A stretch of DNA of 64,000 bases from Asterias rubens (Eukaryota). Shown here piece by piece: positions 9,033 through 35,319 of this stretch. Position numbers and translations under genes: made by a program. The DNA lies in NCBI RefSeq assembly GCF_902459465.1, contig NC_047066.1, positions 2,232,001 through 2,296,000 on the forward strand, written 5' to 3'. Each line of letters starts with the position of its first letter. Within the stretch, counting starts at the first letter, position 1. A model generated the notes under the pieces. The model did not search any database, had not been told where the DNA came from, and saw nothing but the letters and a program-made list of their open reading frames with translations.

Positions 9033-10437
9033 TGGAACGCCAAAGAGGCATTTAATCATCGGTGATGGTCGTTTGCAACCGGTGATCAAATTTGTCATCG
9101 GTGGTGGTCCTATGCGATCGGTGATCAACTTTAGCAATCGGTGATAAAACACGATCGGTGGTCCATTTTAGCGATCGGTCATGCATATTCATGATCGGTG
9201 ATGGTATTAGCGATCGGTCATGCATATTCACGACCGGTGATAGCTTTTTGCAATCGGTCAACTTTAGGGATCGGTGATGGCTTTTTGCAATCGGTCTACT
9301 TTAGGGATCGGTGATGGCTTTTTGCAATCGGTCAACTTTAGTGATCGGTGATGGCTTTTTGCATTCGGTCAACTTTAGTGATCGGTGATGGCTTTTTGCA
9401 ATCGGTCAACTTTAGTGATCGGAGGTGGCTTTTTGCAATCAGTCAAGTTTAGGGATCGGTGGTGGCTTTTTGCAATCGGTCAACTTTTGCAACCGGTGAT
9501 GGGATTTTGGGATATCCGAATTTTGCGTCCGGTCGGTGCAGGCCTACTTCAAAAACTATGATTGTGTAGATTGTGGATAATAATTGTTGTTATTTTCTAG
9601 TTCACACCACCGTGGAGGAATAAATTACACTCACCAGCGGGTTGAATGACGTGCCAAACATTTTTAGAAGAGTACCTTTTTCTAACTATGTAAGGGGGAA
9701 CGCAACAAACATCAAATTAATTAGCTCTTTCTAAAAAATAATAATAATAATAACAAAGGGGTATGAGAGGGTGTGCAAGCGGATATATGTCCCACAATTG
9801 GTTGTCGTCTTCCGGAAATGGTGTATGCCGGGGAAATACAAATAGTTATATTCAGTGAAGGGAAATGTTTTTGAACAAGAGTCTTTTAACCGATAGTTTT
9901 GTGTGTTAGGTGAAATTTGAAATCATACAAGTAGCCCTGTGTAAACAGAGCCGGAGGTGAGAACATTATGACCACACAAAAACCGTTTTTGATCGAAAAA
10001 ACATAATTTTTATGTGCATCATATGAATGGGTTTTTTTTAGGACAAGCACAGATATAGTAAAACCGGGACGCACTCAACACGTTTTATAAAAGGCTAGGT
10101 AAAGTATTATACAAATATTTCCTTTTAAACGGAGAGGCATGTATTAATTGAATCCAAAGCGAAAAACGTACGGTATAAAGTTCTTAATTTAGGGGGGGGG
10201 GGGCGCAAGGCGAAACAGGTGTTATAAAGTACTAAAGCGGAAATAATACAGGAGCGAGAAATTCTCAACCAAATCCAGTGTCAGGGAGGGTGGAGGTGTT
10301 TGGAAAAGGAAAACATGTTATTGGTGAGGTCTCTCACTGTTGGAGTCATTGATGACATAATCATATAAAAAAAAAATTTAAAAAAACATTCACTTGACCA
10401 GTTTATCTCATAGTTTATCTCCCAATCATGGAGGAAT
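9033..10437. mobile_element. Left arm of fold-back element with 37-bp tandem array, truncated at duplication junction
   Basis: Same as 21077-22482. Array unit is CGGTGATGGCTTTTTGCAATCGGTCAACTTTAGTGAT. Confidence 0.75.
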
Positions 10438-10762
10438 TGGCTCGACTAACAGCTTCAAGCTATTAAACCACTGAAAACAGCCAAGTCAGTTAGGTGTTTA
10501 AACACTCGCCGTCTGCAAACAGCAACAGTTTTCAGGGATTATTTAAAACCTGAAATAATTTTGATGAATAACGAAGTGTTTCACAAATGTTAAGACTATT
10601 ACGAGATAAGCATTGCGGTTGTTGGTCTTGTTCAGCAGTTTGATTGAGGTTGTCCGGCATCTTAGTGCACCATCGTCAGGCGGTGGTTACGTCTTGAAAC
10701 AGTTATTCAACTCAATTCGCCTTTACTATCAATTTACCACGTTTTGAGAAACTTGCAAGATG
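10438..10762 (+). promoter_or_regulatory. Orphaned upstream region and ATG (10760-10762) of the C-type lectin gene
   Basis: GCAAGATG abuts the 3' LTR. Joining across the GATG/GAGG target duplication to the minus strand at 27724 gives MRVFQVLSLLLWIYCGRIFA, a signal-peptide-like start. Confidence 0.6.
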
Positions 10763-11132
10763 TGTTATGGACGGTTTGGCCTCCTCAGCCATCCCGCCCA
10801 AGGGATGGAACTTATCAATTAAACACAACTTAAACGTTCTTCTTCTTGAAAACGTAGACCCACAACAGGGTGTTTTATTTAAACACAACTCAAATGAAAT
10901 ACTAGAAAATATACTTGATAAATAATATACGAATAGTGCACCGTCGTCTCGGTGGCGCACCTGAAGGATACAGACCACGAGTCGACGTTGGGTGTGCCTT
11001 AAATACTTAACTATTACATAACATCCACCATGGGGGCATGTTAACCTTCATGGAAAAGCCAGGTGTACATAATCACCATGACCAGTGGGCGTGAACTAAA
11101 CATAAATGTGGGCCGGGGTGAACGTCATCACA
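10763..11132 (-). mobile_element. Gypsy 3' LTR (370 bp, TGT...ACA) preceded by a polypurine tract
   Basis: Reverse complement of 27729-28098, with 4 substitutions seen. PPT AAAAACAAGGGGCGTA lies immediately 5' on the minus strand (11133-11148). Confidence 0.93.
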
Positions 11133-11778
11133 TACGCCCCTTGTTTTTGAAATTGGCCCCTGACAATTCATACTATTTTAAACATTAGCTTAAATACGTC
11201 TTGAACCTACTAGATTTGGAAAGTAAAACATCTTTCCAATGAATAGCTCAAACACTAATAATATACAGTTTATTTTACAAACACATTCTGTTCATTAAAT
11301 TATTGTTCACTTCAGTACAGTCAATAACTTTTAGTCAACAGCATTTCGCAATATCATTAGATGGTATTTAGATTCAAAATTATGGCGATAAATGTTGATC
11401 AGTCAAATATCGACAAGGTCTTAAAGCAAATGAATTGGAATTTTATAAGGCTTAGACGAGTTGACCGACGTCAAGTGAATTTCATCAGTGTCGAGTGGAT
11501 TCAGCGGCTGTTCCAAGAGATCTTCGTAGCTACTTCGTTGGCAGGGCCGATTGTCGTCTCCTCTGATGTCCAAGGGTAATCCGGATTACCTAAACAAACT
11601 AGAATATTTTATACATTACTACAAGATATTGTTTTTAATCAATTACAGTACTTTCTTAACGTAGTTCTGAGGACCACTCAGAATTTATGAAGCTATCATT
11701 CTGATACGATAAAGGTATTCACACGTTTGCCAACAAAGCTATAATTTCAATAACTAAAATATATGCCATACAATATTA

Positions 11779-14700
11779 TTAATTTGGTTTGCAAGTGATA
11801 CGGACAGGATTGCGCTGAAGATAGTTTCTAAGGGTTTCGTTGAGATTTTAAACAGGTTCCCATGAATTTTTGCAGTTGGGGAAATCTTTCCACTTTATCA
11901 AAAAGTGTAGTTTGCCATTGACAAACTTGCCACGAAGAACCTTTTCTACGTGAAACTCTTTACCGGCAGGTTGTCCAATGTCCGGTAAACCAGGTATATT
12001 TAACCTAGTTTGCTGGGGTTGTTGCGTAGCTAACAAAGGCTGAAAGGAACCTTCTGGGCAATCACTGTCTTCAATGAAATCAAGTGGATCTCTCTGAACA
12101 AAATCCCTTGGCATCACGTGATTTGGTGGTCTGGCAAAACGATTATATGCGAATTTCATTCGGTTTACATGAATTGGCACATGAAGTAATTTGTTATTTT
12201 CCAGGTTTCGGACTCTGAAATTAACAAGACCGGTTTGTTGCACAAGCAAAAATGGACCACACCAAAATTTCTGGAGTTTTTTAGACAGTCCCTTTTGGGT
12301 TGCTGGGATATAAATATAAACCACATCTCCAACTTGATAGGGTACTTCTTGAGTACGACTGTCATAACGTTCCTTCATTGAAGCTTGGTTAGATTCGAGG
12401 TGTTTCTTCGATATTTCTCTGGCAACTTCAAGTTGATCAATTAAGTCGTGAATATAATCTCTTACATTTCGGTCTGAATATTCAGGTTTTTCATGAAGAG
12501 ATACATCAATAGGCAGTACTGCCTCTCTACCATACAACAAAAAGAAAGGGCTGAATCCAATTGAATTGTCCGCAGGTGTACTGCGATACGCAAACTGAAT
12601 GGCAGGAATATAGTTATCCCAGTTGGTATGGAACTTGTTTACATAATGAGATACTGTAGTTAAAATCACAGAATTAAATCTTTCTTGTACAGCATTACAT
12701 TGCGGATGGTACGGACTAGTGTTTACTTTGTCAGTACGCATGATTTTGCACACTTCTTGAACTAATTTACTTAAAAAGTTCGTTCCTCGGTCACTTAGGA
12801 GTACAAGGGGGCAACCATGATTACAAATAATTTCTTTGAAAAATACAGTTGCTACAGTGGCAGAGTCCGTTTTAGCAATAGGCACAAGGATAGGCCATCT
12901 AGTACAATGATCCATGAAACATAATACATATCTATTTCCTGATTCAGTAACTGGGAGGGGGCCTAGAATGTCTACGCTAACCCTTTGAAATGGTCCAGGA
13001 ACTTTCATGGTAAGCAGTGGGGCTACAACTTTGTGCTTTGGTGTTTTAACACGGTGACAAGAATCACAAGATCTGACCCAATTATCAATATCACGATGCA
13101 TGAACTTCCAAAAATATCGTTGCCGAATTTTACTGTATGTTCTATGGAAACCAAAGTGAGCTGACAGAACTAGATCGTGACAATGATGAAGAACAGTATC
13201 TATGTACGGACTTGGGATGTACAATTGAACAATATTACGTTCTGGTATCCTTCTGTTTCGTGGCGTGTGCCAGACATGATACAAAATGCCATTATGTACA
13301 AAATACTGATTTACTTCAAGTAATAACCTACGGGCTAGTTTGTTATCCTCTGAAAGGACATCTGATTCCAAATAATCAATGATCGGTTTCGAAAATGAGT
13401 CATTTTGTTGACCCCGTTTGATTTTATCTAGGTCAATGTTCTCATGAACATCAGGTAAGTGATCTTTGAAATTCACCATGTTTTGATTATGCAAACGTTT
13501 ACCATGTTGGTATCTGAGATTTCGCACTTCGTCTACTTTAGACAAGTTTTCTTCATGTTTGGAATTATCTAAACCAGTTAAAACTTTCTCAGCTTCTGAT
13601 TGACTTAATTGTGCGGTCTCAATATGTGAACTTTCTACTGGTGGGTGAGAAACACATGTGGGTTGGTAATTATCTTTACAGATTCTACTCAGAGTGTCTA
13701 CATTAGCAAGTTTCTTGCCTGGTCGGTGTTCAATATCATAACTGTACGATTGCAAATACAAGGACCAACGAGCTAATCTGCCAGATGAACGTTTTTGGTC
13801 AAACAACCATTTGAGAGCTTGATGATCAGTTACAATTTTGAATTTTGGGCTATGTTCCAAGTAAGTGGAAAACTTTTTCACTCCTTCAACAACGGCAAGT
13901 GCTTCTAATTCCGTCACAGTATAATTGCGTTCCGCTGGCTTAAGTGCTCTACTGGCATATGCAATAGCTCTTTCGTTACCGTCCTGTATTTGGGATAATA
14001 CAAATCCTAATCCTTGAAAAGACGCATCAGTTTGCAAAACAAATTGTGAGTGTTCATCAAACCTTGGATGGGACAATACAGGTGGCTCTAAAAGTTTTTG
14101 TTTCAGTTGCTCAAAAGCTTCTGAACATTCTTTTGTCCATTGGAAAGGAATGTCTTTACGAGTCAGTGCAGCTAATGGTTGAGCAATTTTGCTGAAATCC
14201 TTTATGTAACGCCTGTAATAACCAACAAAACCTAGGAATGCACGAACATCTTTGACATTCTTTGGTGATGGGTATTCTTGTACAACTTTGAGCTTTTCTG
14301 GGTCAGTTGCAACACCGTCTTCACTAATTATGTGCCCGAGGTAGTGTATTCTATCACATGCAAATGAACATTTCTTTGGCTTAAGTTTAAGATTAACATC
14401 TCTGAATTTCTGAAATACTTGGCACAAATGATCGAGATGGTCTTTGAAAGTGTCACTATAAATGATGATGTCATCCAAGTACACTAAACAAAACTTCCAA
14501 TGCAACCCTCTTAGCACTTCATGCATTGTTCTTTGGAATGCACTGGGTGCATTGTGTAGTCCAAAAGGTAACACATTGAATTCATACAATCCGTCTTGAG
14601 TAATGAATGCCGTTTTCTTTTTAGAATCTCTATCTAAACCTATTTGCCAATATCCTGACGCCATATCTAGAGTTGAGAAATATGCTGGTTTAGTCATACC

Positions 14701-15373
14701 AAGGTTGTTAAAAGTATCGGAAATACTGGGCAGTGGAAAATTGTCTCTGACCGTGATCTGGTTTAATCTTCTAAAGTCAATACAAAATCTGTATTCGCCA
14801 GTTTTCTTTGTAACCATAACAACTGGACTAGAAAATGGTGAAGTTGACTCTGAAATAATACCATCATTTAACATTTTGTTAACATGTTCTCTTATTGTCT
14901 GCTGTAACCTAGGTGAATGTCTGTATGGGCGGGATCTAACTGGAGGATTGTTACCAATATCGATTCTATGTTCAACCTTATCGTAAAATCCACGTGGGCT
15001 TTTTGCGGTTTCAAACACATCAGCATAACTATTGATTAGAGCTTTAAGCTGTTGTTGTTGAGTAAGGTTTATGGAAGAGGATGAAATGTTAATTTTATCG
15101 AGAACCTCTTGACCACTAAATGAACATTGTGGGTTTGTAACCTCATGACTAATGTTGGTGTTAGGTTCGATCTTGTCAAAATTGGTTAATACAGAAATGT
15201 TCTTCCACAATATTGAACGTACCAATCTTAGTACGGGGAAAAATTGTAACTGGAACCTCGGATGGATTCATTACCATAACTGTTACTTTCGTACCAAAGT
15301 CTGTCATGCGGGAGCTAGATATAGTGTTAGCAACTACTAGACCAATGTTCTGGATATTACGTCCACCATGACC
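11779..15373 (-). pseudogene. Ty3/gypsy pol: dUTPase-like spacer, RT, RNase H, integrase (GPY/F), chromodomain
   Basis: ORF 11848-15225 has FCIDFRRLN, LDMASGYWQI, YLDDII, LQTDAS, an HHCC Zn finger, VDILGPLP/SDRG/QERFN, WCGPF and FHVEKVL..LIKWKDF..NSWEPV. One frameshift lies near 15200, and a premature TAA lies in the chromodomain (frame continues to 11779). Confidence 0.95.
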
Positions 15374-17884
15374 CAGGGCGTCGATCGCTACTGAAAAGTA
15401 GGGGGGACGGGCGAGCAAGTCTTGAAAATAAATGTCGATTTTCTTTTATTTTGATATATATTTTGTTTTTAAAATAAAAATAATAACACTGAACTTACCT
15501 TAGAATTTACCAACAATTCTACCGCGTGTATCAGCTGACTTGAGTAGAAATTCCTGTGCAATGGCTTGAGGATTTACTGCTGCCAGTCGGTCTCGATGTA
15601 CGTGGCAGACCATGAGATGGTTAAGACGTTTCTGAGTCATAGTACTTCGCAACCATGTTTTCTTGCGTCGTAGAGCACTGAATGAACGTTAAGCTACACA
15701 TGAACTTGCTGGGGAGATGAGAAGAAGCCTGAGCAACTGTTCAACTTGAGGGAACATTCTACGGACTTCCGGCACCATTGCCAAAAAGATCTTTCGGTAG
15801 TCCTCAACGGATGATCCACTAAACTGATTCCGAAAGAAGGCCAATTGTTGCTGTAGAGAATCCGTGAGTTCAGGATACTTACGAATTGTATGTGGCTGAA
15901 CGGACCCAGTAAGTAGCACGTCGCTTAAGTCCTTATACAAGATGAGGTCAGTGGATGTGAAGTAGTCTTTTAAGTTAGAAATTGCACTGTCAATGACCTT
16001 GAAGAAATCCACTCTGTACAATTCCTCTGCAGAGTTGGCAGTGTACTCTTGGGTAGCTCCATCATCGTGTCTTTTTGGAAGTTTGCGCTTACGTGGAAGA
16101 GTTACTGGTTCTAGGTTGCACTGTATGAGTAGTTGTTCTGTTGCTTCAAAGACCTCCCTAAATTGTTGAACACAACGAAGGGTGAGTAGATTACGCCTTG
16201 TTACTTCTGCTGCATCAAGCATCCCAGAAACTGTCTTATCTGTTCCTTGGAGAGCCCTATTAAAGTGTTCAAGGCACTGGATAACAGGTAAAGCTGTAAA
16301 CAATCCAAGAATGCATTTTCCAGACGAAAGACAACTATGAAGGCCGCTAGCTCTTGATGAAGTGTTTGTCCCAAAGTCTTCAGCTGCTTCATGAAGGGCG
16401 TCCAATACGGCTTCAAAATTCTGCAAAACCGATTTAACTGCAGCTGAATGCGTTAACCAGCGAGTTGGGCATATTGGCTTTAGTCTTGTAGGGGAAGGAT
16501 TATCAGTGTCAGCAGAATGTAGATTCAAGTACAGGTGTTTGAACTTTCCAGAGCTGTTATATAGGTTGCCGAGTTCCTGTACATATCCAAGGGCATTCCT
16601 TATATATGGTGCAGTTTGCAGTGCTTTGGAAGTGATGAGGTGTGTCACATGGGCTCCGCAGTGAAAGTAACTTGCCATCGGTTGTATTTTTTTAATCTCT
16701 GCTTGACATCCTTTGTATTTTCCAGACATGTTGCTTGCCCCGTCATACGTTTGTGCTCTAAGGTGTTCTATAGGCAGTTGCAGTCGTATCAGGGCATCCT
16801 GCAGCATCTTAGAAAGTGATTCCCCACTTGTTGAGGAAACCTGGTAGAGGCCTAGCATTTCCTCCTGAACAACAAACGAATCATCAACATAACGCACGCA
16901 CACACTCTCCTGTTCATTGCCCTGAATGTCTTGCGTTCCATCAATTATGATTCCAAACTGTGTAGACATTTTGTTCACATCACTGCAGATATCCCTCAAA
17001 ACAGCATGGCCCATTAACTGCAAAATTTCGTTCTGAATGTCACCACCTGTAAAAGTAGTCTTCCTTGTTAGCCATCTTTTCAGATTGTCATCATCATCAG
17101 CCCGCAACTGCAATAGTTTCTGGAAGTTACCATCCAACGCATCTTTTCCTCTAATGGCAAGACCCTGTTGGGCTAAAAACTGCAATGAGGTAATGATCTT
17201 TAGAAGAGCTGACCGTGCGGTATGTTGTTCTTCTCGAAGTCTAGAGTCGAGTTGCACATTGGTATCAGTTTGGATTCTTCGAAATTTTAGATTTTCAGAA
17301 GCAAGCTTGTGAGTGGTCGACTTTTCATGTTGTCTAAATTTCTCTGTGCTCTTCTTCCAGTTGCGAAATCCCTTTGACACAAAAGCCTCATCTGAACAGC
17401 GGGCAAGCTGAGTAAGATTTTGCCGAGAAGCACTAGTACAACAGTGGCAAAGTACCCCACCTATGCTCTGATCGAAATGAAGCCATGGGAAGTCTTTGAA
17501 CCACTTGTGCTGAAACTTAAGCTTACGGTTCTGGAGTGTTTGAACTGGGATGCAACTCACATCATCAGGTTGATAAGGTTGATTGGGGAACTGTTCAGCA
17601 GTAGTCTCTATCTCAACGTTCGAACATTCACCTTGTTCTTTCTCAATCTCACCAATTTCACTTTGTCTTTGGGCATCATGTTCATCCTGTTCCTGTTGAG
17701 ACGTAGCCACTGAGAAGAATTTTCTAAGATCCATTTTAGAAAAGCTTTGGGAGGCCAGCGTGAGCGTTTATCGTTTGGCAGCTTGAAGGTCTTCGACAAA
17801 ATAATCTTGTCATGGCCCAAACTGCTCCTGTTTATTAGCTGTTCCGACCTACCGTCGGAACAGGTATTGTTTTCGTCGAGATTT
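15374..17884 (-). mobile_element. hAT DNA transposon, 3' portion with TIR (copy 2)
   Basis: TIR CAGGGCGTCGAT at 15374 matches the TIR at 29618. Confidence 0.88.
15500..17734 (-). pseudogene. hAT transposase with nonsense codon at the catalytic Glu (copy 2)
   Basis: As copy 1. Reading through the TAA at 15689-15691 gives a 744-aa protein ending at 15500. Confidence 0.9.
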
Positions 17885-20035
17885 TTATTAGGTGTTCGTG
17901 CTGATGCACGAACACCTATTGTTATTGCTCTGTTTTTTTTTCTTCTCCATCTTCCTTCTTCTTCACCGTCAACTCTTATCTACAGCATAACTCAAGATTC
18001 AAGCCAAACTGAACCTTGAAACTCACCAGACAATTGAACCTCAATACGAAGACGGCACAGATTTCATTACGTCATGATGACGTCATTAGGTGTCAAATTA
18101 CAGGGTTTTTAAAGTTGAAAGGGACCATTTTCGTTTTGCTGTATCTCAACGAATATGAAAGCTATGATGTTCAAAGTTTTCGCATCTGATAGACCAAGAC
18201 TGGGGCAACATTTGAAAAGTTAACGCCAAAATCGTACGACCTTAGCATCCGGGTCGTTACCCTGGGTCGAAGTTCACCTTCGGGTTTTTTTTCGTCAAAA
18301 AACAACTTTCGAGCTTTTCTACGGAATAACTCAAGATTGAGATTGAATGGAATGTTGAAACTCAATAGTTAGTTGAACCTCAGTATCAAGACAACACATA
18401 CTTAATTACGTCAGTATGACGTCATCGGGAATTGAATTACGTTAGATCAAAGTTTAATATTTGTAAAAATCATAACTCAAAAACTATGATTCGGATTTTG
18501 ACAATCTACACATCATCGGATAGATCATTAAATTACTCACCCTGGCAGACTAATTCTTCTCTAACATTATTTAATTAATAAAATATTTTTAATACTTCTA
18601 GTGCAAAACAAAATTTGAAAATTTCATAAAATCTTATCGTATTCATGTTTTTAAAACTACTGATCATTTCAACGTAATTTTTGTTTCAGATTGTAAAACA
18701 GCAATCCCGCTCAATCTTTTGCACAGATATAACCAAATTTGGACCTTTACATCAGTCGAAAACGGACGTCAAAGCACCTGTTGACCCACGCGTTTACCCC
18801 ATTTTGATCAACAACGCACGCTATGTACGCTATGCAGTGCAAGCGCGGGAATTCCCAAAAATGCTCTCTTTAGTCCAGCGAAAGAGGGCGCTGTAACGTT
18901 TTTAGTAACATCGAGCGCTGAGTGAATCGCGGTGAATCGCAATAGTTGAGTAATAATGAACAACGTCTCGCACCAAAACTACAAGTAGGAATACATATGC
19001 ATTGATGTTATAAGATACATTATACACCTTCAGATAGTCCATCACATAATTATAAAATGTTTACAAGTCATACATCAGCTGAAAGGTTTTAATGAACTAG
19101 TCAGGATCTACACAAATGAAATCAGTTTAAACTTGGCTTCTTGTTCAAACCAGAGGTTGAAAATAATTGGTCAAAGAAAAATAATTTCACAACCACACAT
19201 TTGATTTTTTATATATTTATACGTCATTGGGTAGGTATGTAACAACTTAAGAAACGATACACAACATTGACTATTAAACCTTGACCTTCAGTTAAACAGG
19301 AAGATGCAGTTAATTATTTGAAAAAATATTACCCCAGAACCAGAAATTAGTTGTTTATTATCTGAACGTCGTCAGATAAGGCTTTGAAAAACATTACTAA
19401 CGCTATAATTTGTGACCTGACAAAATTGTCTTCCGGTTCAAACCGGATATTTAATATTTGAAAAAAATCATAACACCTGAACCATACATTGGATTTTTTC
19501 AATCTATGCATCATCTGAAAGGTCTTAATAGACTTATCACGTGCTATACAATATGCGACCCTGTTTGACCTTGACTTCCAGTTAAAGTTGGAAACTGATA
19601 TATAATGTTTGAAAAATAAAAAAATCCTAAACCACATGATTTGATTTTTATCATCTATACGTCAAAAGAAAGAACTCAAAAGACATCACCAACGCTACCA
19701 AGTGTGACCTCATTTGACAGTACCTTCCGGTTCAAAACGGAAGTTGAAACTTTATATTTGAAAAAATCATAACTTCTAAACCAAATATTGGATTTTTACG
19801 ACCCATCCATCATTTAAAAGGTCTTAATAAACTTATCACGCGCAACATAAAAAGTAACCCCTATTTGACCTTTTATCCGATGCAAACCGGATGTTGGTGT
19901 TTAATTTGTAAACAAATCATAACTCCTTAACCAGTCATTGGATTGATGAGGTAAATGTTGTCACCAATTCATTCACTCACTCACCACGAACACCTTGTTT
20001 TTGTAGTAAACAAAATTGTACATGTACCTCTAGTT
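17885..20035 (+). mobile_element. Helentron/HINE-like non-autonomous element (copy 2)
   Basis: 5' palindrome at 17889-17917 and 3' subterminal repeat plus CTAGTT at 19985-20035. Inserted in a T run of the hAT leader. Confidence 0.6.
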
Positions 20036-21076
20036 ATTTTTATTATTATTATTATTCTTTGTTTCCGCACAAAACCCCATTGCGTTTGTACAGCATTTTT
20101 GTTCATGCTCCGTCTCCTAAAGTATAAGGATAAAAGAGTTAAATCATTTATCAAATTGAAGCTTAGAACATAAGCTTTACTCTAATAAAAAAGTGTTAAC
20201 ATTCTTAATTAATTAACCACGTGGTCTTCATTTGAATTTTTAATTTGTAAACTTGATGCAGTCACTTTCATGTTATTGTGAAACATTCTCTTCGGTAATA
20301 CAACACAGTATGTACTTCGATGAGTTGTTGACTTCTTGAAAGGAGTCTATACTATTTTGTTTCCTACCTGCGTTCTGGACACATTACTCTGTACACGCAC
20401 AACGTACGGAGGTTTAGGATTTTCGTTAAATCAACTTGTACTAGATCAAACATCAAACCACCGACCCCCAAAAAATTTTAAAATCGTAATTAACTAACCC
20501 CGTGACCCATATTTGCATATTTAATTGTACAAGGGGACAAAGTTGTTGGAGCTTCCTGTTGATGCTGACATCATGAGAACATCAGCACAAGTATTGGAAT
20601 TGCACTATTGAACCACTTGGAGTGTTCATGGAGTCCAACACGTCAGTCTAGAGTCCAACTCTGATTGAAAAAAACAATTCAGGCATCATCTTCAATTTAA
20701 TTTTATGCAACAAGCAAACTTATAAATTTTCTGATTTTATTTCAAAGGGTAACATAAATGGCTGTTAGCAAACGGTTTCCAACAAAAACTACATGGTGTA
20801 CGTGCATAATACTCTTACTGGCCTCAAGCATTGACCTCTAGATAATAAATCAAGCATTCAGTTTCGAACAATACCAATCGTCAGCCGTTGAAGTTCATTG
20901 AACATGGGGCTGATGGCGATCAAAAGGCTAAAAGTTTGTTATCGCCACATTATTCAGCGAACCATGAATCATACACAGCTACTATTCACAAGAAAATCTA
21001 TGCGTTGAGGGTAAACAGACAGCACACAATGGAACCACTGGGCTCACACTGTGTGGTCTAGTATAGGAAGATATTA

Positions 21077-24000
21077 TGGAACGCCAAAGAGGCATTTAAT
21101 CATCGGTGATGGTCGTTTGCAACCGGTGATCAAATTTGTCATCGGTGGTGGTCCTATGCGATCGGTGATCAACTTTAGCAATCGGTGATAAAACACGATC
21201 GGTGGTCCATTTTAGCGATCGGTCATGCATATTCATGATCGGTGATGGTATTAGCGATCGGTCATGCATATTCACGACCGGTGATAGCTTTTTGCAATCG
21301 GTCAACTTTAGGGATCGGTGATGGCTTTTTGCAATCGGTCTACTTTAGGGATCGGTGATGGCTTTTTGCAATCGGTCAACTTTAGTGATCGGTGATGGCT
21401 TTTTGCATTCGGTCAACTTTAGTGATCGGTGATGGCTTTTTGCAATCGGTCAACTTTAGTGATCGGAGGTGGCTTTTTGCAATCAGTCAAGTTTAGGGAT
21501 CGGTGGTGGCTTTTTGCAATCGGTCAACTTTTGCAACCGGTGATGGGATTTTGGGATATCCGAATTTTGCGTCCGGTCGGTGCAGGCCTACTTCAAAAAC
21601 TATGATTGTGTAGATTGTGGATAATAATTGTTGTTATTTTCTAGTTCACACCACCGTGGAGGAATAAATTACACTCACCAGCGGGTTGAATGACGTGCCA
21701 AACATTTTTAGAAGAGTACCTTTTTCTAACTATGTAAGGGGGAACGCAACAAACATCAAATTAATTAGCTCTTTCTAAAAAATAATAATAATAATAACAA
21801 AGGGGTATGAGAGGGTGTGCAAGCGGATATATGTCCCACAATTGGTTGTCGTCTTCCGGAAATGGTGTATGCCGGGGAAATACAAATAGTTATATTCAGT
21901 GAAGGGAAATGTTTTTGAACAAGAGTCTTTTAACCGATAGTTTTGTGTGTTAGGTGAAATTTGAAATCATACAAGTAGCCCTGTGTAAACAGAGCCGGAG
22001 GTGAGAACATTATGACCACACAAAAACCGTTTTTGATCGAAAAAACATAATTTTTATGTGCATCATATGAATGGGTTTTTTTTAGGACAAGCACAGATAT
22101 AGTAAAACCGGGACGCACTCAACACGTTTTATAAAAGGCTAGGTAAAGTATTATACAAATATTTCCTTTTAAACGGAGAGGCATGTATTAATTGAATCCA
22201 AAGCGAAAAACGTACGGTATAAAGTTCTTAATTTAGGGGGGGGGGGGGCGCAAGGCGAAACAGGTGTTATAAAGTACTAAAGCGGAAATAATACAGGAGC
22301 GAGAAATTCTCAACCAAATCCAGTGTCAGGGAGGGTGGAGGTGTTTGGAAAAGGAAAACATGTTATTGGTGAGGTCTCTCACTGTTGGAGTCATTGATGA
22401 CATAATCATATAAAAAAAAAATTTAAAAAAACATTCACTTGACCAGTTTATCTCATAGTTTATCTCCCAATCATGGAGGAATGTCCCGATCAACACCCAT
22501 CTCTGGACGTCCCCAGCAGGAGTCTTCCTGTGTCCATGAACTGTACTGTAGTATAGGTATCTTTAACCACCTGGCTGCATATCATTATAAAATTGTTAAA
22601 CCGTACCACGTTTTAATAAGAACCAAGCTTTAGTGCAGTGGCTATGGGAGACAATAAATTCACAATACCCAAAGGCGTGGGGACAACTTGAGTGACTGGT
22701 CTCACTTCATTGATCATCTGTATGTCTATATCTTCTAGAATTTGGAAATCTCCAGTTCAAATACTCATACAAAAACTAGTGATTTCCTTTTCCAAACTTA
22801 ATCTGTAAATCTACCGTATCTAAAGTTTAAACTTCTCCTCTGAACAAAGGGGCAAAATTTCATTCCCTGAACTATATGCACACAAAAACACACCAACCAT
22901 GGCCAAACAAAAGCGAATATTGTGAGAAATCTGAGTAGGGTCACTTGTCAAACAAAATGAGAGTATTTTGTCATAATTTCATAGAGCAATCATGAAATTC
23001 AGAAATATTATCGGTACAGACTCGTATTAGTTGTTCAAAAAACATTTAAAAATATTTGTATTCCCACACCATTTCTGGAGGACGACAACCAGTTGGGACA
23101 TGGATCCCCTTCCGCACCCTCTCCTACCCCGTTGTTATTTTACATTTTAGAAAGAGCTAGCTAATTTGATGTTTGTTGCGTCCCCCTGACATAGTTATAC
23201 AATGAGACTCTTCTATGAATGTATGGCAAGTCAGTCAAACAGACTGGTGAGTGGCGTAATCTGCAAACATAGGTTTTGAAATAGGCTTGCACCGGACGCA
23301 AAATACCATCACCGATGATTATTTGCCTCTTTGGCGTGGCGCCAACGCCAAAGAGGCAAATAATCATCGGTGATACTTGGCATAAAATGTGTCACTGACC
23401 TCATTACTATAATAAGCGAAGAGTTCCCACGGTCAACTCATTACCATATTGCCCGCGAAAGACGAGACATGTTTACATCACACCACCACCACGGACGCTC
23501 AGTGAGCGTGATAGGGTCCAAAGGTTGTGATAAGAGAAGTGCGTGATTGGACGTCAAAATGATTAATTAATTTACTTCACATCCTGTAGCTGTGTTGTCT
23601 GATGTCTGACGAAAGCTATACATATTCATGAGCTGCATACTAGCATATCAAAGAGCCCCCCCCCTTTAATTTCCTCGTTTGAAAAGGCCTAAAGATATCC
23701 TAACCCACACCCTCTCCTACCGATTTGTTATTATTATTTTTTTTTAGAAAGAGCTAATTAATTTGATGTTTGTTGCGCTCCCCCTTACATAGTTATAAAA
23801 TGGTACTCTTCTAAAAATGTTTGGCAAGTCAGTCAACCCGCTGGTGAGTGTAATATTCCTCCATGGTGGTGTGAACTAGAAAATAACAACAATTAATATC
23901 CACAATCTACACAATCATAGGTTTTGAAGTAGGCCTGCACCGACCGGACGCACAATTCGGAAATCCCAAAAATCCACCACCGGTTGCAAAAGTTGACCGA

Positions 24001-24446
24001 TTGCAAAAAGCCAACACCGATCCCTAAAGTTGACCGATTGCAAAAAGCCATCACCGATCCCTAAAGTTGACCGATTGCAAAAAGCCATCACCGGTCACTA
24101 AAGTTGACCGATTGCAAAAAGCCATCACCGATCACTAAAGTTGACCGATTGCAAAAAGCCATCACCGATCCCTAAAGTTGACCGATTGCAAAAAGCCATC
24201 ACCGATCACTAAAGTTGACCACCGATTGCAAAAAGCCATCACCGGTCGTGAATATGCATGACCGATCGCTAATACCATCACCGATCATGAATATGCATGG
24301 CCGATCGCTAAAATGGACCACCGATCGTGTTTTATCACCGATTGCTAAAGTTGATCACCGATCGCATAGGATAACCACCGATGACAAATTTGATCACCGG
24401 TTGCAAACGACCATCACCGATGATTAAATGCCTCTTTGGCGTTCCA
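21077..24446. mobile_element. Fold-back-type element: ~730-bp inverted arms each with a 37-bp tandem array, TA flanks
   Basis: TA|TGGAACGCCAAAGAGGCATTTAATCATCGG ... CCGATGATTAAATGCCTCTTTGGCGTTCCA|TA. Arms are 21077-~21810 and ~23706-24446. No transposase ORF. Confidence 0.75.
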
Positions 24447-24592
24447 TACATTTCTAACATTCAACGCACAACTTCTGCTTGTTCACATTAAATTTACCTT
24501 CATCACAATTAATTGTAATGGGGGTGTGGGTGTGTGTGTGTGTGTTGTAGAATTATATAAAACCAACATTGAGGAGGAAACCCAATGAAACA

Positions 24593-25648
24593 ATGAATAT
24601 CAAGACCACCTTCTGTTTTACGTTGATTTACGGACTTTTGGTGTTTGGAGTGGTGTATTTTGTTATGCGTAGAGATGACAATTTACTCCTGGCACAACGA
24701 CACAAAACATTGTCTGGTGTAATAACCGTGAGTGGAAGTAGGCCTACTGCACGCAAGAACATCACAATGCAGAGACCAACCAAAAAACAAAATAAAACCA
24801 TCGATTTAACCACAGTGGAACCAGTCGTCAATCCTCATCGTTTCGAGTTTACAATACACAACCAAGCTGCCTGCTTCAACAGGAACAACTCACACGGAGA
24901 ACTCTTCTTGGTTTTGCTCGTCAAATGTGCAACTTTCGAGAAGTTGGACCGAGAGCAAATCCGGAAAACTTGGGGAGGTGTCAAGGAGGTTCTCGGTAGA
25001 CGAGTCCTGACGATGTTTCTTCTAGGGGAGTCAACGGACCCCATCATTCGGAGACAAATTCAAGAGGAAAACCGTGAATTCCATGATCTTATCCAAGAAG
25101 ACTTCATCGATGCGTACACAAATCTGACTTACAAAAACATGATGGGACTGAAGTGGGTCTCGATGTACTGCCATCAAACCAGCTTTGTATTCAGTGTAGA
25201 TGCTGACATGATGATTAACATTGTAACACTGGTGAAACGTCTGTCCAAAATGCCCAAGACTAACTTTGCAGAAGGACATCTTAGGACAAATGTCATCGTA
25301 GAAAGAGGAAACAAATCCAAGTGGTACATCCCAAAGGAGGTTTACGCTCCTAAAAGGTATCCACCTTTTCTTAATGGCGCTTGCTACGCAATGTCTCGAG
25401 ATGTAGCTGTGCGTGTCTTTGACAAGAGTAAGTATGTTCCGTTCCTTCGTCTCGATGATGCATTTGTAGGAATAACTATGAACAAAACCGGCATCATTCT
25501 GCGATTTTCTCCGATGTACGAGCAATATTCGAAGAAGTACTCTGAGGCGATGAAAAAGGGTATTGGAGTTGGAATACTTCACAACAGACATCGTCTCAAT
25601 GATAAAATGTTGAGCCTTTGGCATAAACTAGTTGGATCGCAAATTTAG
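24593..25648 (+). CDS. Beta-1,3-galactosyltransferase / GT31 family type II membrane glycosyltransferase (351 aa), copy 1
   Basis: Intact ORF with an N-terminal TM segment, REQIRKTW, DLIQEDFIDAYTNLTYK, a DxD motif (VDADM), YPPFLNGACYAMS and LDDAFVG. Splice acceptor TTGTAG at 24550 lies upstream of the ATG. Confidence 0.92.
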   Translation: MNIKTTFCFTLIYGLLVFGVVYFVMRRDDNLLLAQRHKTLSGVITVSGSRPTARKNITMQRPTKKQNKTIDLTTVEPVVNPHRFEFTIHNQAACFNRNNSHGELFLVLLVKCATFEKLDREQIRKTWGGVKEVLGRRVLTMFLLGESTDPIIRRQIQEENREFHDLIQEDFIDAYTNLTYKNMMGLKWVSMYCHQTSFVFSVDADMMINIVTLVKRLSKMPKTNFAEGHLRTNVIVERGNKSKWYIPKEVYAPKRYPPFLNGACYAMSRDVAVRVFDKSKYVPFLRLDDAFVGITMNKTGIILRFSPMYEQYSKKYSEAMKKGIGVGILHNRHRLNDKMLSLWHKLVGSQI

Positions 25649-26030
25649 GACATGTCATACTATATGACGGCCTTGTGACCAATATTTACGACATGGAGTC
25701 CTGTGATTAAGTCGTGAACTTTGTCAGTGTCGTCAGTTTGTATGACTTGGGGTCAAAGTGAGTGTCGTCAATATTCAGGACTTGAGGCACAAGTCATGAA
25801 ATTGGTCGTAATAATGGCGTCAATATTCACGAGTTGAGGCTCAAGTCCTGACTTTTGTCGTAAATACTGGAGTCAATGTTTATGACTAAAGACACGGAAC
25901 CCTGAAACAGAGTGTGGCTTTTATTTATAAAATACGTTTAATACTTTTAATTAGTCCTGTCACTATAGACTTAAATGATGTATCGTACGTACGGCGAAAC
26001 GCTAGTCCAGCAGTCCGCAGAGAAGCGTTA

Positions 26031-26130
26031 AGCCCGGTTCATACTTCCTTCCTGCGAATTCATAGAGCGAAGCGAATGTTGACATCAAATTCACGTCAAA
26101 TTCGCATTCGCAGGAAGTATGAACCGGTCT
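26031..26130. mobile_element. PIF/Harbinger-type MITE
   Basis: TIR AGCCCGGTTCATACTTC with TTA target duplication on both sides. Same family as 54131-54310. Confidence 0.75.
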
Positions 26131-27341
26131 TTACCGCGGTATTTCTTATATATAGGTTTTCTCGGTCAATTTCGGAAAATGTGCAGCCAATTTAATTTTC
26201 ATGCATTCGAATTAAAGCTATTTTGTCCCTCTCCGGTTTTTACTGCGTTTCAAATTCAGAACTCGGTCATTCAATTTCGTTTTGAGGCATTCAAGTTCCT
26301 AGCACACCGATTCTTTTTCATGACACACAATCATCATTCAATTTAGCAGAGCTGGTTCGACTAGAGATTTTGCTGATTTAATCCTTTTCAATTTCGTAAA
26401 GAGGCAATCAATTTCGCTAAACGAGGATTAAAATAAGCCAGGAGTTAAAATGAATGGATTTTTGTTGAAATTGACCGGGAAAACCTATAATAGTAATAAT
26501 AGTAATAAAACATAATAATAATAAAAGGTATTTGTAATGCGCCAAATCAATCGAAGCAGATGTTCAAGGCGCGGCAGAAACAGCAATATGTAACAAATGA
26601 ACCCACATTCACATCCACGTGAATGCAATATCATTCAATAATAATAACACATGTATTATGTATACTGGATTAATGAGACATGTCATTTGAAAGGGAGAGG
26701 TGGGCCTTGAAAAGCGTTTGTTATAAAATGCATATGGTTAGAAAGATGATTTAGAAGTAGAATATATCCACACAAATATGCCTCTAAATTGTTGCACCAT
26801 TTTGTGGAGTCAAATGTTTGGTTCTATAATGGCGGGCCGCGTGTTGGAAACCGCGTGTTGGTTCACGATGTAAAAGGAAGCCCACGTGATTTCGAGGCAT
26901 ATTTGTATGGATCATTGGTTTTTTTTTTACTCATTTCATAACAAACGCTTTTCATAGCCCAACTTGCCCGATCCAATGCAATTGTTCCTTTAATGAAGTG
27001 AACGTTTGAACAAATTTAGCTAAAAACATAATAAAACAATTCAGGAATTAATTTATAAATTCAAACTTTATGAGTTCTAACTTTGAAAAGAAAACAACAC
27101 TTATGGAACAGTATCATAAAGGTAATCACCCTGTTTCCAATTACAGTAATGAATGCTAAATTCGTTGCGCAAACATGGCACCAGACTATTATTTCGTCCA
27201 GCCTCAGTTTGGTTACAATGAGTTGGAATGGAGTAAAATCAAGATGGCCACGCCGTGCTAAAGGTCTATTCTTAGTGTCGGACTCTGTTATAAATTGCAT
27301 ATTATAACATATTTTTAATAGTCCGACGAAGAATTCTTACT

Positions 27342-27728
27342 TTAGTTTATTGGTCCAAGGAAGATTATATTGTGTGGTTCTCCAATCGCCCAATTTTCAT
27401 ATCCATTGTTCTCACCCTTCAACGGACAGTGCTGCCAGTTTCCTTCCTCCTCGATGTCATTGCAACCAAACCAGAGACTGGTGTCAGGTTTCTGATCAAA
27501 CTCATTCAGGAATAGTTCCCATATGTAATCCTGTTCGGATTGTGAGTTTGGGACAGCCAGGTTTCCTCGTGACTCGACACAAGTTCGATTTGCTTGGTAC
27601 CAATCCATCATGTCAGTTAGAAGTAACACGACTCGCCGTATCGGTGCCAATCAAGGGGGCATATTTCAGCGAAGATGCGGCCACAGTAAATCCAAAGAAG
27701 AAGACTTAACACTTGAAATACACGCCTC
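27342..27728 (-). pseudogene. Secreted C-type lectin pseudogene (body, copy 1)
   Basis: RVFQVLSLLLW..CPLDWHRYGESCYF, then a frameshift, then WYQANRTC..LAVPNSQSEQDYIW..LWFGCND..NW..EPH. The 3' part of the CTLD is missing, and the 5' end is cut by the LTR. Confidence 0.82.
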
Positions 27729-28098
27729 TGTGATGACGTTCACCCCGGCCCACATTTATGTTTAGTTCACGCCCACTGGTCATGGTGATTATGTACACCT
27801 GGCTTTTCCATGAAGGTTAACATGCCCCCATGGTGGATGTTATGTAATAGTTAAGTATTTAAGGCACACCCAACGTCGACTCGTGGTCTGTATCCTTCAG
27901 GTGCGCCACCGAGACGACGGTGCATTATTCGTATATTATTTATCAAGTATATTTTCTAGTATTTCATTTGAGTTGTGTTTAAATAAAACATCCTGTTGTG
28001 GGTCTACGTTTTCAAGAAGAAGAACGTTTAAGTTGTGTTTAATTGATAAGTTCGATCCCTTGGGCGGGATGGCTGTGGAGGCCAAACCGTCCATAACA
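27729..28098 (+). mobile_element. Gypsy 5' LTR (copy 1)
   Basis: 370 bp TGT...ACA, followed by PBS and gag. Confidence 0.93.
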
Positions 28099-28100
28099 TA

Positions 28101-28111
28101 TGGTGGAGAAT
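28101..28111 (+). promoter_or_regulatory. Primer-binding site, probably tRNA-Ala
   Basis: TGGTGGAGAAT lies 2 nt after the LTR. It is complementary to a tRNA 3' end ...AUUCUCCACCA, as I recall for eukaryotic tRNA-Ala. Confidence 0.65.
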
Positions 28112-28309
28112 CCGGCGCTGAACTCCCGGTGGCGCACCCTGCCGGTTGGCTGAAGGACGCAGATCCGCTTGGGGATGCAAAAGGTATTTAACTTTATACT
28201 TTATTAATTTGTTTTCTTGTATTCCCCTGGCGTATACTTTATTTTATTGTGCAAATTGTGTATTTTGATTATTATGCCACATTGCAATTTTTATCATATT
28301 TCTATCATA

Positions 28310-29617
28310 ATGGCGAGCAAATATGAATTGAAGTTTAGGGATACTTACTCTGGCACTGAAGATCTTTACTTATTTTTGTGTAGACTAGATAGTTATAGTA
28401 AACTGCGAGACTTTGCAGCCGAGAAAAAGGTTCTGTCACTAGGTTTACGTTTGACTGGCCCTGCTGCTCTATGGTTTGCTGATTTGCCCGATAGCGAGAA
28501 AACTGACTACAAAACAGTCACTGATGCACTCAGACTTGCTTTTGAAGGTGATAGTGTACGATGGGTTAGAGAAGCCAAACTGGCCGAGCGTCAGCAAGGC
28601 GAAAACGAGTCCATTGACTTATATTTCACAGACATAGTGCATCTCAGTAGACAATTACACCGATCAGACAACGAACAGATGGCACGGTTTGTTCGCGGTC
28701 TAAGACCGACGCTAAAAGCGTTCGTAATTTCCAAAGAACCTGAAAATATGGCTCAAGCGATCAATTTTGCACGTCTTGGTGAAAGCGTAGACAAAATTTG
28801 CAAACCACCAGCAATTCAGAGCATTGAACAAAGTACATGTATTAAAGATGAGGTCACCACTAAACTTGACAATTTGCAAACCCAGGTAGATAATATCGTA
28901 AGCCTGATAAATTCCAGCAAACCAGTACCAGTTCAACCACAGCAATTCTTTCGCCATCGCTCAAATCGAAGCCACACTCAAACAGTGCAGATTTAATGGT
29001 GGTTGTAATCGCTGTGGAAAGTACGGTCATAAACAGGCAAACTGCTACTCTAAAGTTCACATCCAAGGTTATCCTTTAAACTGACTCAGCCGCCTACCGT
29101 GACAGGGGTTGGGGTTGGCGGCTGTGACGTTCAAAACGATGACCCCTTGAAAATTAATCTTGAACACAACAGTATGATCTCTATTACCATTGGCGATGAT
29201 ACATTGAAATGTTTGATAGATACGGGTGCCACCAGTAACTTGATTTCTGAAAAATACTATAAAACCAATGTTATTTTCAGACAGTTGCGTTTGTTGAAAC
29301 CTAAATTTGACCATGCAACCACAGCCAATGGTGACAGTGTAAAGATTGTTGGATTTCTCAATGTACCTGTACAAATTTTAGGAGCACAATTTATGGTACC
29401 TTTTTATGTGACAAGTAAATTATATCAAAGTGTTATACTAGGGTCCGAGTTCCTAATGTCACAAAAAGTGTCAATTGATTTTGGGAAATCTAAACTTCGC
29501 ATTCATAGGAAAAATCAGTTGCGTACCTGTACTGAAATTACGGTACCCCCACGTTCACAATCTCTCTGTGAGGTCAGAATAAAAAATTACCTTCCCTCAG
29601 GTGTAATAGGTCATTGT
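28310..29617 (+). pseudogene. Gypsy gag (capsid + CCHC knuckle) and aspartic protease, copy 1
   Basis: MASKYELK..LTGPAALWF..FVRGLRP. The knuckle CNRCGKYGHKQANC sits in a shifted frame. The protease motif LIDTGAT lies after the TTTAAAC -1 site. The region is cut by the hAT TIR at 29618. Confidence 0.9.
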
Positions 29618-30055
29618 CAGGGCGTCGATGGGTGGGGGACGGGGGGGACATGTCCCCCCACTTTTTAGAGAGGGGGGGGACAGCATATCAGATGTCCCCC
29701 ACTTTTTGATAGACTGTTCGTTAGAATTTCCTTACAATTTTTGTTAAAATAAAAGAATAGGCCTAGCGAACAAACGGTGAAATGTTTTCTGCACTTTCAT
29801 CTTTTTCTGATGGACCACGCGCAGAATGGTATTTTGGGTCTATTTCCGTTTCTATAGTACAGACAATAGACGACAAGTTTCGTCCAAGACATGAACGCCA
29901 AATTAGCTTTCAAGTTATGCGTCGTTTGTTGTGTACGTATGCTTTAATGTGCGGTACACGATCCCTCCTCAAAGAAAGTGTGTGCGCACACGTGCAAATG
30001 TATTACATTTTGTTACAATCGCACAACGCACAAATGTTAGTAAAATCAATTAAAA
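29618..30055 (+). mobile_element. hAT transposon 5' end (copy 1)
   Basis: TIR CAGGGCGTCGAT plus G/C-run subterminal palindromes. Flank GGTCATTGT matches GGTCATGGT beside the other TIR. Confidence 0.8.
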
Positions 30056-31194: not shown

Positions 31195-31803
31195 ATAATT
31201 TATTACAAGCAAATGCAATCGTACAATAATAGAAAACAAAAACTAAAAATCAATGCAAAACACATGTAGGGGATGGAGGAGCCCATAAAAAGCAAACCTT
31301 AACGAGTACGGACCCCCTCCCCCCTTTTTTTGTAACGAAGAAAGCAATGTAAGCAATTCTATTTAGTGGGTGTAATCTTATGTAGCGGCAAAACAATTCA
31401 AACTTACAGGAAGAACAAACACAAAAACAGTTAGCGTAAAATAAAACTTAACCATATATTTAAATGAAACAGATAAACAAAATACCCAAAATAAATACTA
31501 GAGAAATTGGGCCCCACAACTCTTGCTGGGAAAAAAACCATGTCTAGACGTTTTGTAGTCACCTTGGTTGGGGAGCGAGGACGATTGCACTTTTGGTATT
31601 GTCATTGTTAAACTCCGGCTCTGAAGTTGTTTATTGGGTGGTGTTGCAGTAGTGCAGGAAGTTTGTTATCGCCACATTATTCAGCGAACCATGAATCATA
31701 CACAGCTACTATTCACAAGAAAATCTATGCGTTGAGGGTAAACAGACAGCACACAATGGAACCACTGGGCTCACACTGTGTGGTCTAGTATAGGAAGATA
31801 TTA

Positions 31804-35173: not shown

Positions 35174-35319
35174 TACATTTCTAACATTCAACGCACAACT
35201 TCTGCTTGTTCACATTAAATTTACCTTCATCACAATTAATTGTAATGGGGGTGTGGGTGTGTGTGTGTGTGTTGTAGAATTATATAAAACCAACATTGAG
35301 GAGGAAACCCAATGAAACA

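What the first reader, a model, noticed from the sequence alone, without database searches (positions are those of the whole stretch)
10438..30055. Four-level nested insertion (lectin > gypsy > hAT > Helentron-like) split by a ~12-kb inversion
Seen: the two halves of each element lie on opposite strands, but their ends fit. (1) The LTRs at 10763-11132 (-) and 27729-28098 (+) are ~99% identical. (2) The hAT TIRs at 15374 and 29618 are flanked by GGTCATGGT/GGTCATTGT, and removing the hAT restores the gypsy frame LPSGVIG-HG-GRNIQNIGLVVANT. (3) The hAT halves both end in an A/T run next to Helentron-like ends, whose subterminal repeats match 13/14 (ATTAGGTGTTCGTG vs ATTAGGTGTTTGTG). (4) Removing the gypsy restores the lectin ATG. 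Inference: flipping roughly 18-20 kb to 30-31 kb makes everything contiguous, so the order of events is readable and the breakpoints lie in the Helentron-like sequences. Exact breakpoints are not resolved.
Basis: partly seen in the sequence, partly recalled or inferred. Interest (0 to 1): 0.8.

Follow-up and report, generated by a model that had tools for sequence, protein, structure and literature searches.

The report
Nested transposons split by inversion, then duplicated
A stack of five transposable elements inserted one inside another at the start of a lectin gene was cut in two by a clean 10.6-kb inversion, and the assembly then shows two near-identical head-to-tail duplications; the history can be read base by base, but every piece is of an ordinary kind.

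Summary
Several details needed correction.

- **The nest has five levels.** C-type lectin start codon > Ty3/gypsy chromovirus > hAT > a Helentron-type non-autonomous element (HEL) > a second such element (R, 2.1 kb, 53 bp inside HEL).
- **The halves fit.** Uninterrupted family copies elsewhere in the genome show that each pair of halves abuts at one site.
- **The breakpoints are now exact.** They lie at 21035-21037 and 31616-31619. One is inside HEL. The other is inside an unrelated LTR fragment (Z), not in Helentron-like sequence.
- **The exchange is reciprocal.** Canonical HEL and Z copies show that no base was lost or gained. The only homology is 2 bp (GG).
- **An uninverted copy exists.** A 99.3% paralogous fragment at C5:1.63 Mb keeps the original order.
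They are head-to-tail: 12,044 bp and 10,727 bp, over 99.9% identical, copy number 2-3-2. All copies carry the inversion junction. The second encloses the inverted segment almost exactly.
- **Read support is missing.** Public short-read contigs neither confirm nor exclude the new junctions, so the duplications could still be assembly errors.

All the components are known kinds, and interest is modest. The scan had not reported this structure elsewhere.

The parts
10438..10762 (+). Lectin 5' flank, ending in the start codon ATG (10760-10762). 10438 is also the first base of duplication unit 1.
   Evidence: unique in the genome apart from its duplicate just upstream of the window
10763..11132 (-). 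gypsy 3' LTR (370 bp, TG...CA)
11133..15373 (-). gypsy internal 3' part. The open frame 11851-15267 carries RT, RNase H, integrase and chromodomain.
   Evidence: Pfam; collinear with an uninterrupted family copy (L022)
15374..17836 (-). hAT part A: terminal repeat at 15374 and a transposase frame 15692-17767 (692 aa, DUF4371)
17837..17889 (+). HEL 5' end (53 bp): TT, then a palindromic subterminal repeat starting AGCTGTTCCGAC
17890..20035 (+). R, a complete 2.1-kb Helentron-type non-autonomous element inserted 53 bp into HEL. It begins AGGTGTTCGTGC and ends GTACATGTACCTCTAGTT.
20036..21036 (+). HEL middle part, up to breakpoint 1. 21035-21036 (CC) is the 2-bp ambiguity.
21037..21068 (-). Left piece of the Z LTR (family LTR positions about 1460-1500), now next to HEL
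21069..24455 (.). T2, a 3.4-kb dispersed element with 750-bp terminal inverted repeats built of 37-bp units. The right end of duplication 1 (22482) falls inside it.
24551..25645 (+). Open galactosyltransferase frame (365 aa) inside the inverted segment. A second copy is at 35278-36372.
27345..27727 (-). Lectin coding region: signal peptide and C-type lectin domain, with a frame change near 27620-27626
27729..28098 (+). gypsy 5' LTR
28099..29617 (+). gypsy gag and protease
   Evidence: Pfam
29618..30055 (+). hAT part B (terminal repeat at 29618)
30056..31618 (-). HEL 3' part. The element's 3' end ...GTCTAG is at 30056-30059 on the reverse strand. There is a 53-bp tandem array at 30583-31006. 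It ends at breakpoint 2 (GG at 31617-31618).
31619..31662 (+). Right piece of the Z LTR (first 44 bp). In the second copy it continues 42346-42915 to the LTR end.
31659..31662 (.). Joint of duplication 2, with AAGT shared by both sides
10437..10438 (.). Joint of duplication 1 (middle of T2 joined to the lectin 5' flank), with 1 bp (T) shared
1..10437 (+). First copy of duplication 1. The full unit runs from 1,606 bp before the window to 10437, and the second copy is 10438-22482.
31659..42389 (+). Second copy of duplication 2 (first copy 20932-31662)

Best explanation
**The nest.** A Ty3/gypsy chromovirus inserted at the start codon of a C-type lectin gene. A hAT transposon inserted into its protease region. 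A Helentron-type non-autonomous element (HEL) inserted into the hAT at a T-rich site. A second such element (R) inserted 53 bp inside HEL.

**The inversion.** Later, two double-strand breaks occurred, one inside HEL and one inside a fragment of an unrelated LTR (Z) 10.6 kb away. They were rejoined with the intervening 10,580-10,584 bp flipped. The rejoining was exact and used at most 2 bp of homology, which points to end joining. The flipped piece carries the gypsy 5' half, the lectin coding region, a galactosyltransferase gene, the element T2, hAT part B and the HEL 3' part.

**The duplications.** The inverted allele then gained two overlapping head-to-tail duplications of 12,044 and 10,727 bp. 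The copy number along the locus is 2-3-2. The joints share 1 bp and 4 bp. The likeliest cause is two backward template switches during replication.

**Shown versus inferred.** Shown: the nest, the exact reciprocal breakpoints, the duplicated structure in the assembly. Inferred: the repair mechanisms, and that the duplications exist in the animal rather than only in the assembly.
For: **Each level abuts at one site in reference copies.**
- gypsy.
- hAT: an uninterrupted copy at C16 with a perfect 8-bp target duplication.
- HEL: five complete copies with the same two ends, and more than ten further loci with the canonical arrangement across the breakpoint.
- R: eight copies with the same ends.

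**The breakpoints are reciprocal.**
- Canonical HEL reads ...AAACTCCGG|TTCCATTG...
- Canonical Z reads ...GCCCAGTGG|CTCTGAAG...
- The window reads ...AAACTCCGG|CTCTGAAG... and, on the other strand...GCCCAGTGG|TTCCATTG....

**An uninverted copy exists.** The fragment at C5:1,629,866-1,635,984 is 99.3% identical. It keeps HEL uninverted and joined to hAT part B and 112 bp of gypsy.

**The duplications.**
- Both copies of each duplication carry the inversion junction, so they came after it.
- The copies differ by 1 and 3 substitutions plus one-base run-length differences.
- No N run lies at either joint.
Against: - **No read support yet.** In the Logan contigs of four public runs, no contig bridges breakpoint 2 or the joint of duplication 2. 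Only canonical HEL and Z continuations appear.
- **Junction words are rare.** A junction-word search found at most 2 of 5 sampled words in any run. Two metagenome scans were blank. Such contigs drop rare paths between high-copy repeats, so this is no proof of absence.
- **The duplications look suspicious.** The units are about one long read in length. Their differences are mostly homopolymer lengths, as consensus errors would be.
- **An unexplained coincidence.** Duplication 2 encloses the inversion with only 105 bp and about 40 bp to spare.
Confidence: 0.62

Rival explanations
1. The nest and the inversion are real, but one or both head-to-tail duplications are assembly errors. That is, the same haplotype was laid down twice, so the true locus has one copy of each segment.
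For: - The units (12.0 and 10.7 kb) are about one long read in length.
- The copies differ almost only in homopolymer lengths.
- No public contig crosses the joint of duplication 2.
- An N run lies 1.1 kb beyond the end of duplication 2.
- False duplications are documented in long-read assemblies (PMC9516828).
Against: - Both joints are sharp, lie in non-homologous sequence and share 1 bp and 4 bp, as real joints do.
- No gap separates the copies, whereas false duplications are most often separated by a gap.
- A heterozygous inversion cannot by itself create a Z-to-HEL joint in direct orientation.
Confidence: 0.27
2. The inversion itself is a mis-join: a contig was placed in the wrong orientation, or chimeric reads were used.
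For: No independent read support was obtained.
Against: - Both junctions are exact and reciprocal to the base inside two unrelated repeat families.
- There are no N runs and no inverted repeats at the ends.
- An orientation error would leave gaps or overlaps. Chimeric reads would not give a matched pair of junctions.
Confidence: 0.05
3. The halves belong to different insertions of the same families and only look like one split element.
For: - The gypsy 4-bp flanks match at only 3 of 4 positions.
- The hAT has no intact 8-bp duplication.
Against: - The halves abut within 2-4 bp at four nested levels.
- The 99.3% fragment at C5:1.63 Mb carries HEL, hAT part B and gypsy still joined.
- Two unrelated families are split reciprocally.
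Confidence: 0.01

Closest known systems
Helentron-associated interspersed elements (HINE / DINE-1), Thomas et al. 2014, PMC4067079
   Same: HEL and R share the described features:
- TT at both boundaries.
- A palindromic 12-bp subterminal repeat 2 nt from the 5' end, with its complement 33-40 nt from the 3' end.
- A short palindrome 8-14 nt from the 3' end.
- Central tandem repeats.
- No coding capacity, and insertion into T-rich sites.
   Different: No autonomous partner with matching ends was found. The three Rep-helicase-endonuclease loci examined share no sequence with HEL or R.
Nested transposon stacks used to order insertions (as described for maize intergenic regions; from my own knowledge)
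   Same: Successive insertions, each interrupting the previous one. The order can be read from the nesting and from LTR divergence (1.1% here).
   Different: Here the stack mixes an LTR element, a hAT and two rolling-circle-type elements, and it is then broken by an inversion.
Simple two-break inversion repaired by end joining
   Same: Two junctions, a reciprocal exchange, and 2 bp of shared sequence.
   Different: No inverted duplications at the breakpoints, unlike staggered-break inversions (from my own knowledge). No flanking inverted repeats, unlike homology-driven inversions.
DUP-TRP-DUP complex copy-number gains by iterative template switching (PMC6902434)
   Same: Copy number 2-3-2, and joints with 1 bp and 4 bp of microhomology.
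   Different: All copies here are in direct orientation. The event is at 10-kb scale in a starfish assembly and is not confirmed by depth or spanning reads.
False duplications in long-read assemblies (PMC9516828)
   Same: Near-identical adjacent copies whose differences look like consensus errors.
   Different: There is no gap between the copies. Read depth and k-mer multiplicity could not be tested.

Membership tests
Ty3/gypsy LTR retrotransposon (chromovirus) | Two LTRs ending TG...CA, with a primer-binding site and a purine tract | tested here: met
Ty3/gypsy LTR retrotransposon (chromovirus) | Domain order gag-protease-RT-RNase H-integrase, with a chromodomain at the end | tested here: met
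   Pfam on the two halves; order confirmed on an uninterrupted copy
Ty3/gypsy LTR retrotransposon (chromovirus) | Target-site duplication (4 bp in this family) | tested here: inconclusive
   GATG versus GAGG here (3 of 4); ATAT/ATAT in sister copy L022
hAT transposon | Short terminal inverted repeats | tested here: met
   CAGGGCGTCGAT at both ends; CAAGGGCGTCGAT in sister copies
hAT transposon | 8-bp target-site duplication | tested here: inconclusive
   Not intact at this copy, where the flanks overlap by 2-4 bp. Perfect CGGACTAT in the C16 sister copy.
hAT transposon | Transposase with a hAT dimerisation domain | tested here: inconclusive
   Only DUF4371 was detected; no Dimer_Tnp_hAT match
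Helentron-associated non-autonomous element (HINE) | Subterminal inverted repeats: near the 5' end, and 38-60 nt from the 3' end | tested here: met
   R: 2 nt and 40 nt. HEL: 2 nt and 33 nt
Helentron-associated non-autonomous element (HINE) | 3' palindrome, and TT or a T-string at the boundaries | tested here: met
   8 R copies and 6 HEL copies
Helentron-associated non-autonomous element (HINE) | Ends shared with an autonomous Helentron (Rep-helicase-endonuclease) | tested here: not met
   Helentrons exist in the genome: Rep, PIF1 and Exo_endo_phos in one frame, plus an upstream OTU frame. The three loci examined share no ends with HEL or R. Only 3 of 13 loci were examined.
Two-break inversion | Both junctions reciprocal, with the ancestral state rebuilt from independent references | tested here: met
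Two-break inversion | Reads spanning both junctions | tested here: inconclusive
   No bridging contig in four runs. Only assembled contigs were available, and these drop rare paths.
Template-switch DUP-TRP-DUP | Copy number 2-3-2, with microhomology at the joints | tested here: met
   In the assembly only
Template-switch DUP-TRP-DUP | Read depth and spanning reads agree with the copy numbers | not testable with these tools
False assembly duplication | A gap or unsupported sequence between the copies | tested here: not met
   No N at 10437|10438 or 31658|31659; the nearest N run is 43479-43856
False assembly duplication | Half or low read depth on the copies | not testable with these tools
   Raw reads of the sequenced animal were not available here

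The most novel reading that the evidence does not exclude
The inversion and both head-to-tail duplications are products of one replication-based catastrophe in the germ line, or of a process that couples inversion with re-copying of the flipped segment. That would explain why duplication 2 encloses the inverted segment with only 105 bp and about 40 bp to spare.
Probability: 0.12. Interest if true: 0.5.

Novelty: new member of a known kind. Interest (0 to 1): 0.3.

Why it matters
The locus is a tidy worked example. Nested insertions act as internal rulers that fix an inversion to the base and order at least seven events. It also documents two Helentron-type non-autonomous families in an echinoderm genome, probably Asterias rubens by an earlier scan note.

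If the duplications are real, an intact galactosyltransferase gene is newly duplicated. The near-coincidence of inversion and duplication boundaries would then deserve a mechanistic look. If they are false, this is a useful flag on the reference assembly.

Nothing here changes what is known about how such elements or rearrangements work.

Tried and rejected
1. **10437 as a transposon end with rolling-circle tandem copies.** Rejected. Other genome copies run straight through 22482|22483, so 10437|10438 is simply a new joint inside element T2.
2. **The C5:1.63 Mb fragment lying in a lectin paralogue.** Rejected. There are no lectin matches there, and the flanking hits are dispersed repeats. No clean empty site was found.
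3. **Inverted repeats flanking the flipped segment, as a cause of the inversion or of clustered breaks.** None were found.
4. **An autonomous partner for HEL and R.** There is no similarity to three Helentron loci.
5. **Read support.**
   - The four runs laid as contigs show no bridging of breakpoint 2 or the joint of duplication 2.
   - The junction-word search gave at most 2 of 5 words.
   - Two metagenome scans for the junctions were blank.
   - All of this counts as no support, not as evidence against.
6. **The hAT dimerisation domain.** Not detected.
7. **The three substitutions peculiar to the third copy as polishing towards the family consensus.** Not consistent. Two sites move towards the consensus and one moves away.
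8. **A re-inverted or joined version of the retroelement.** I did not build one. The halves were compared separately with natural copies.

Full report
**Where the window lies.** The window is C5:2,232,001-2,296,000 of a 417.6-Mb, 150-contig animal genome. An earlier scan note names the starfish Asterias rubens. I did not verify this independently.

**Large-scale structure.**
- 1-10437 equals 12045-22482 at 99.97%. The unit actually starts 1,606 bp before the window, so it is a 12,044-bp head-to-tail duplication.
- 20932-31662 equals 31659-42389 at 99.92%, with a 10,727-bp period.
- The piece 20932-22482 is therefore present three times.
- The copies differ by 1 and 3 substitutions. All other differences are one-base changes in homopolymer or short runs.

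**The nest, level by level.**
- **gypsy.**
  - Pfam finds RT, RNase H, integrase and a chromodomain on the minus strand at 11851-15267, and gag and protease on the plus strand at 28208-29665.
  - The LTRs (10763-11132 and 27729-28098) are 98.9% identical.
  - An uninterrupted family copy (L022) is collinear with the plus-strand half up to 29619 and with the minus-strand half from 15372. The two halves therefore meet at one site.
- Three family copies read GGTCATTGTCATGGTGG there.
- **Lectin.**
  - The left flank ends in ATG, with a stop four codons upstream.
  - The reverse strand from 27728 continues with a signal peptide and a C-type lectin domain.
  - The 4-bp flanks match at 3 of 4 positions. 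The family makes 4-bp duplications.
  - The lectin frame changes near 27620-27626, so the gene looks dead.
- **hAT.**
  - Both terminal repeats read rightwards on the + strand, which is possible only after an inversion.
  - An uninterrupted sister copy on C16 has a perfect 8-bp duplication. It joins window 17836 directly to 30062.
- **HEL and R.**
  - Between the hAT halves the window has 53 bp of the HEL 5' end (17837-17889), then the complete 2.1-kb element R (17890-20035), then HEL again (20036-21036). On the other side it has the HEL 3' part (30056-31618, reverse strand).
  - Five complete HEL copies and eight R copies elsewhere have the same ends.
  - Both elements show TT boundaries and a palindromic subterminal repeat 2 nt from the 5' end, with its complement 33-40 nt from the 3' end. 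They also have a short 3' palindrome and a ...CTAGTT end, and HEL has central tandem arrays.
  - This matches the published description of Helentron-associated non-autonomous elements (PMC4067079).
  - The genome does hold Helentrons with Rep, PIF1 helicase and an endonuclease in one frame, plus an OTU frame. The three examined share no ends with HEL or R.

**The inversion.**
- Canonical HEL copies run from window 30056-31618 straight into the reverse complement of 21036-20036. More than ten loci show this arrangement.
- At the base level, canonical HEL reads AAACTCCGG|TTCCATTG.
- The sequence to the right of 31618 is the last 600 bp of a 1,415-bp LTR of an unrelated family, Z. Canonical Z copies read GCCCAGTGG|CTCTGAAG.
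- The window has AAACTCCGG|CTCTGAAG at 31610-31626. On the reverse strand it has GCCCAGTGG|TTCCATTG at 21025-21043, repeated in each duplicate.
- The exchange is therefore reciprocal, with no base lost or gained and only GG shared. The flipped segment is 10,580-10,584 bp.
- No inverted repeats flank it.
- One breakpoint is in HEL. The other is outside the nest.
- A fragment at C5:1,629,866-1,635,984 carries the last 64 bp of R, HEL uninverted, hAT part B and 112 bp of gypsy, 99.3% identical to the window over the HEL 3'-hAT-gypsy stretch (96.9-98.9% over the rest). It also shares a private 53-bp deletion in the hAT. It preserves the pre-inversion order.

**The duplications.**
- All copies carry the inversion junction (three copies of breakpoint 1, two of breakpoint 2), so they came after the inversion.
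- The joint of duplication 1 links the middle of T2 to the lectin 5' flank with 1 bp shared.
- The joint of duplication 2 links Z to HEL with AAGT shared.
- The 2-3-2 pattern with short microhomologies is what two backward template switches in one replication pass would give (PMC6902434).
- Duplication 2 covers the inverted segment plus 105 bp on the left and about 40 bp on the right. I cannot explain this coincidence.

**Is it real?**
- The exact reciprocity of the inversion junctions argues strongly against a mis-join.
- For the duplications, the sharp joints and the absence of a gap argue for reality (compare PMC9516828). Read-length-sized units and error-like differences argue for caution.
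- Public data did not settle it.
  - Contigs of four runs show only canonical Z and HEL continuations across 31617-31764.
  - A junction-word search gave at most 2 of 5 words.
  - Two metagenome scans were blank.
  - Such contigs drop low-copy paths between high-copy repeats, so this is no evidence of absence.

**Order of events (inferred).**
1. gypsy inserts into the lectin gene (LTR divergence 1.1%).
2. hAT inserts into gypsy.
3. HEL inserts into the hAT.
4. R inserts into HEL.
5. A fragment is copied to C5:1.63 Mb (0.7% divergence).
6. The inversion occurs.
7. The duplications occur (at most 0.03% divergence).

**Verdict.** All components are of known kinds. Interest is modest.

Noticed in passing
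G000:C5:1,629,866-1,635,984 (L014/L015): A chimeric 6.1-kb fragment, 99.3% identical to the window over its HEL 3'-hAT-gypsy stretch. It holds the last 64 bp of R, HEL uninverted (with its own 2.4-kb insertion), hAT part B and 112 bp of gypsy. It begins TC after ...TTATT and ends ...CCTAG. It may be a read-through copy made by the rolling-circle machinery before the inversion.
   Followed up: partly
C15:14,395,500-14,400,000 (L016/L017) versus window 17836/30056: In another hAT copy, R sits at exactly the hAT site (TTATT^TTAATTG) where HEL sits in the window's hAT. That means two independent insertions at one site, suggesting a strong target preference.
   Followed up: partly
window 21069-24455 (also 9025-10437 and 31796-35182): T2 is a 3.4-kb dispersed element with 750-bp terminal inverted repeats made of 37-bp tandem units. 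At least six other copies exist at 91-97% identity. Its class was not determined.
   Followed up: partly
window 32351, 32688, 32879: The third copy of the triplicated piece differs from the other two by three substitutions within 530 bp, while the other 9.2 kb of duplication 2 has none. Two sites match the T2 family consensus and one does not.
   Followed up: partly
G000:C15:12,913,945-12,923,068 (L045/L046): An apparently full Helentron. One 1,921-aa frame carries DUF6570, Rep, PIF1 helicase and an Exo_endo_phos endonuclease. An upstream 1,141-aa frame carries an OTU protease and a herpes-tegument-like domain.
   Followed up: partly
window 24551-25645 and 35278-36372: An open 365-aa galactosyltransferase frame lies inside the inverted segment and is present twice because of duplication 2.
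   Followed up: no
window 58715-61791 and 63727-64000 (runs on to about 64795): A 3.1-kb array of 22-bp units (about 97% alike, strongly skewed composition) and a separate array of 41-bp units.
   Followed up: no
window 43479-43856: A run of 378 N lies 1.1 kb beyond the end of duplication 2. It was left as it is.
   Followed up: no
window 20422-20428: The window's HEL lacks about 580 bp that canonical copies (C3, C14, C5:1.63 Mb) carry at this point.
   Followed up: no
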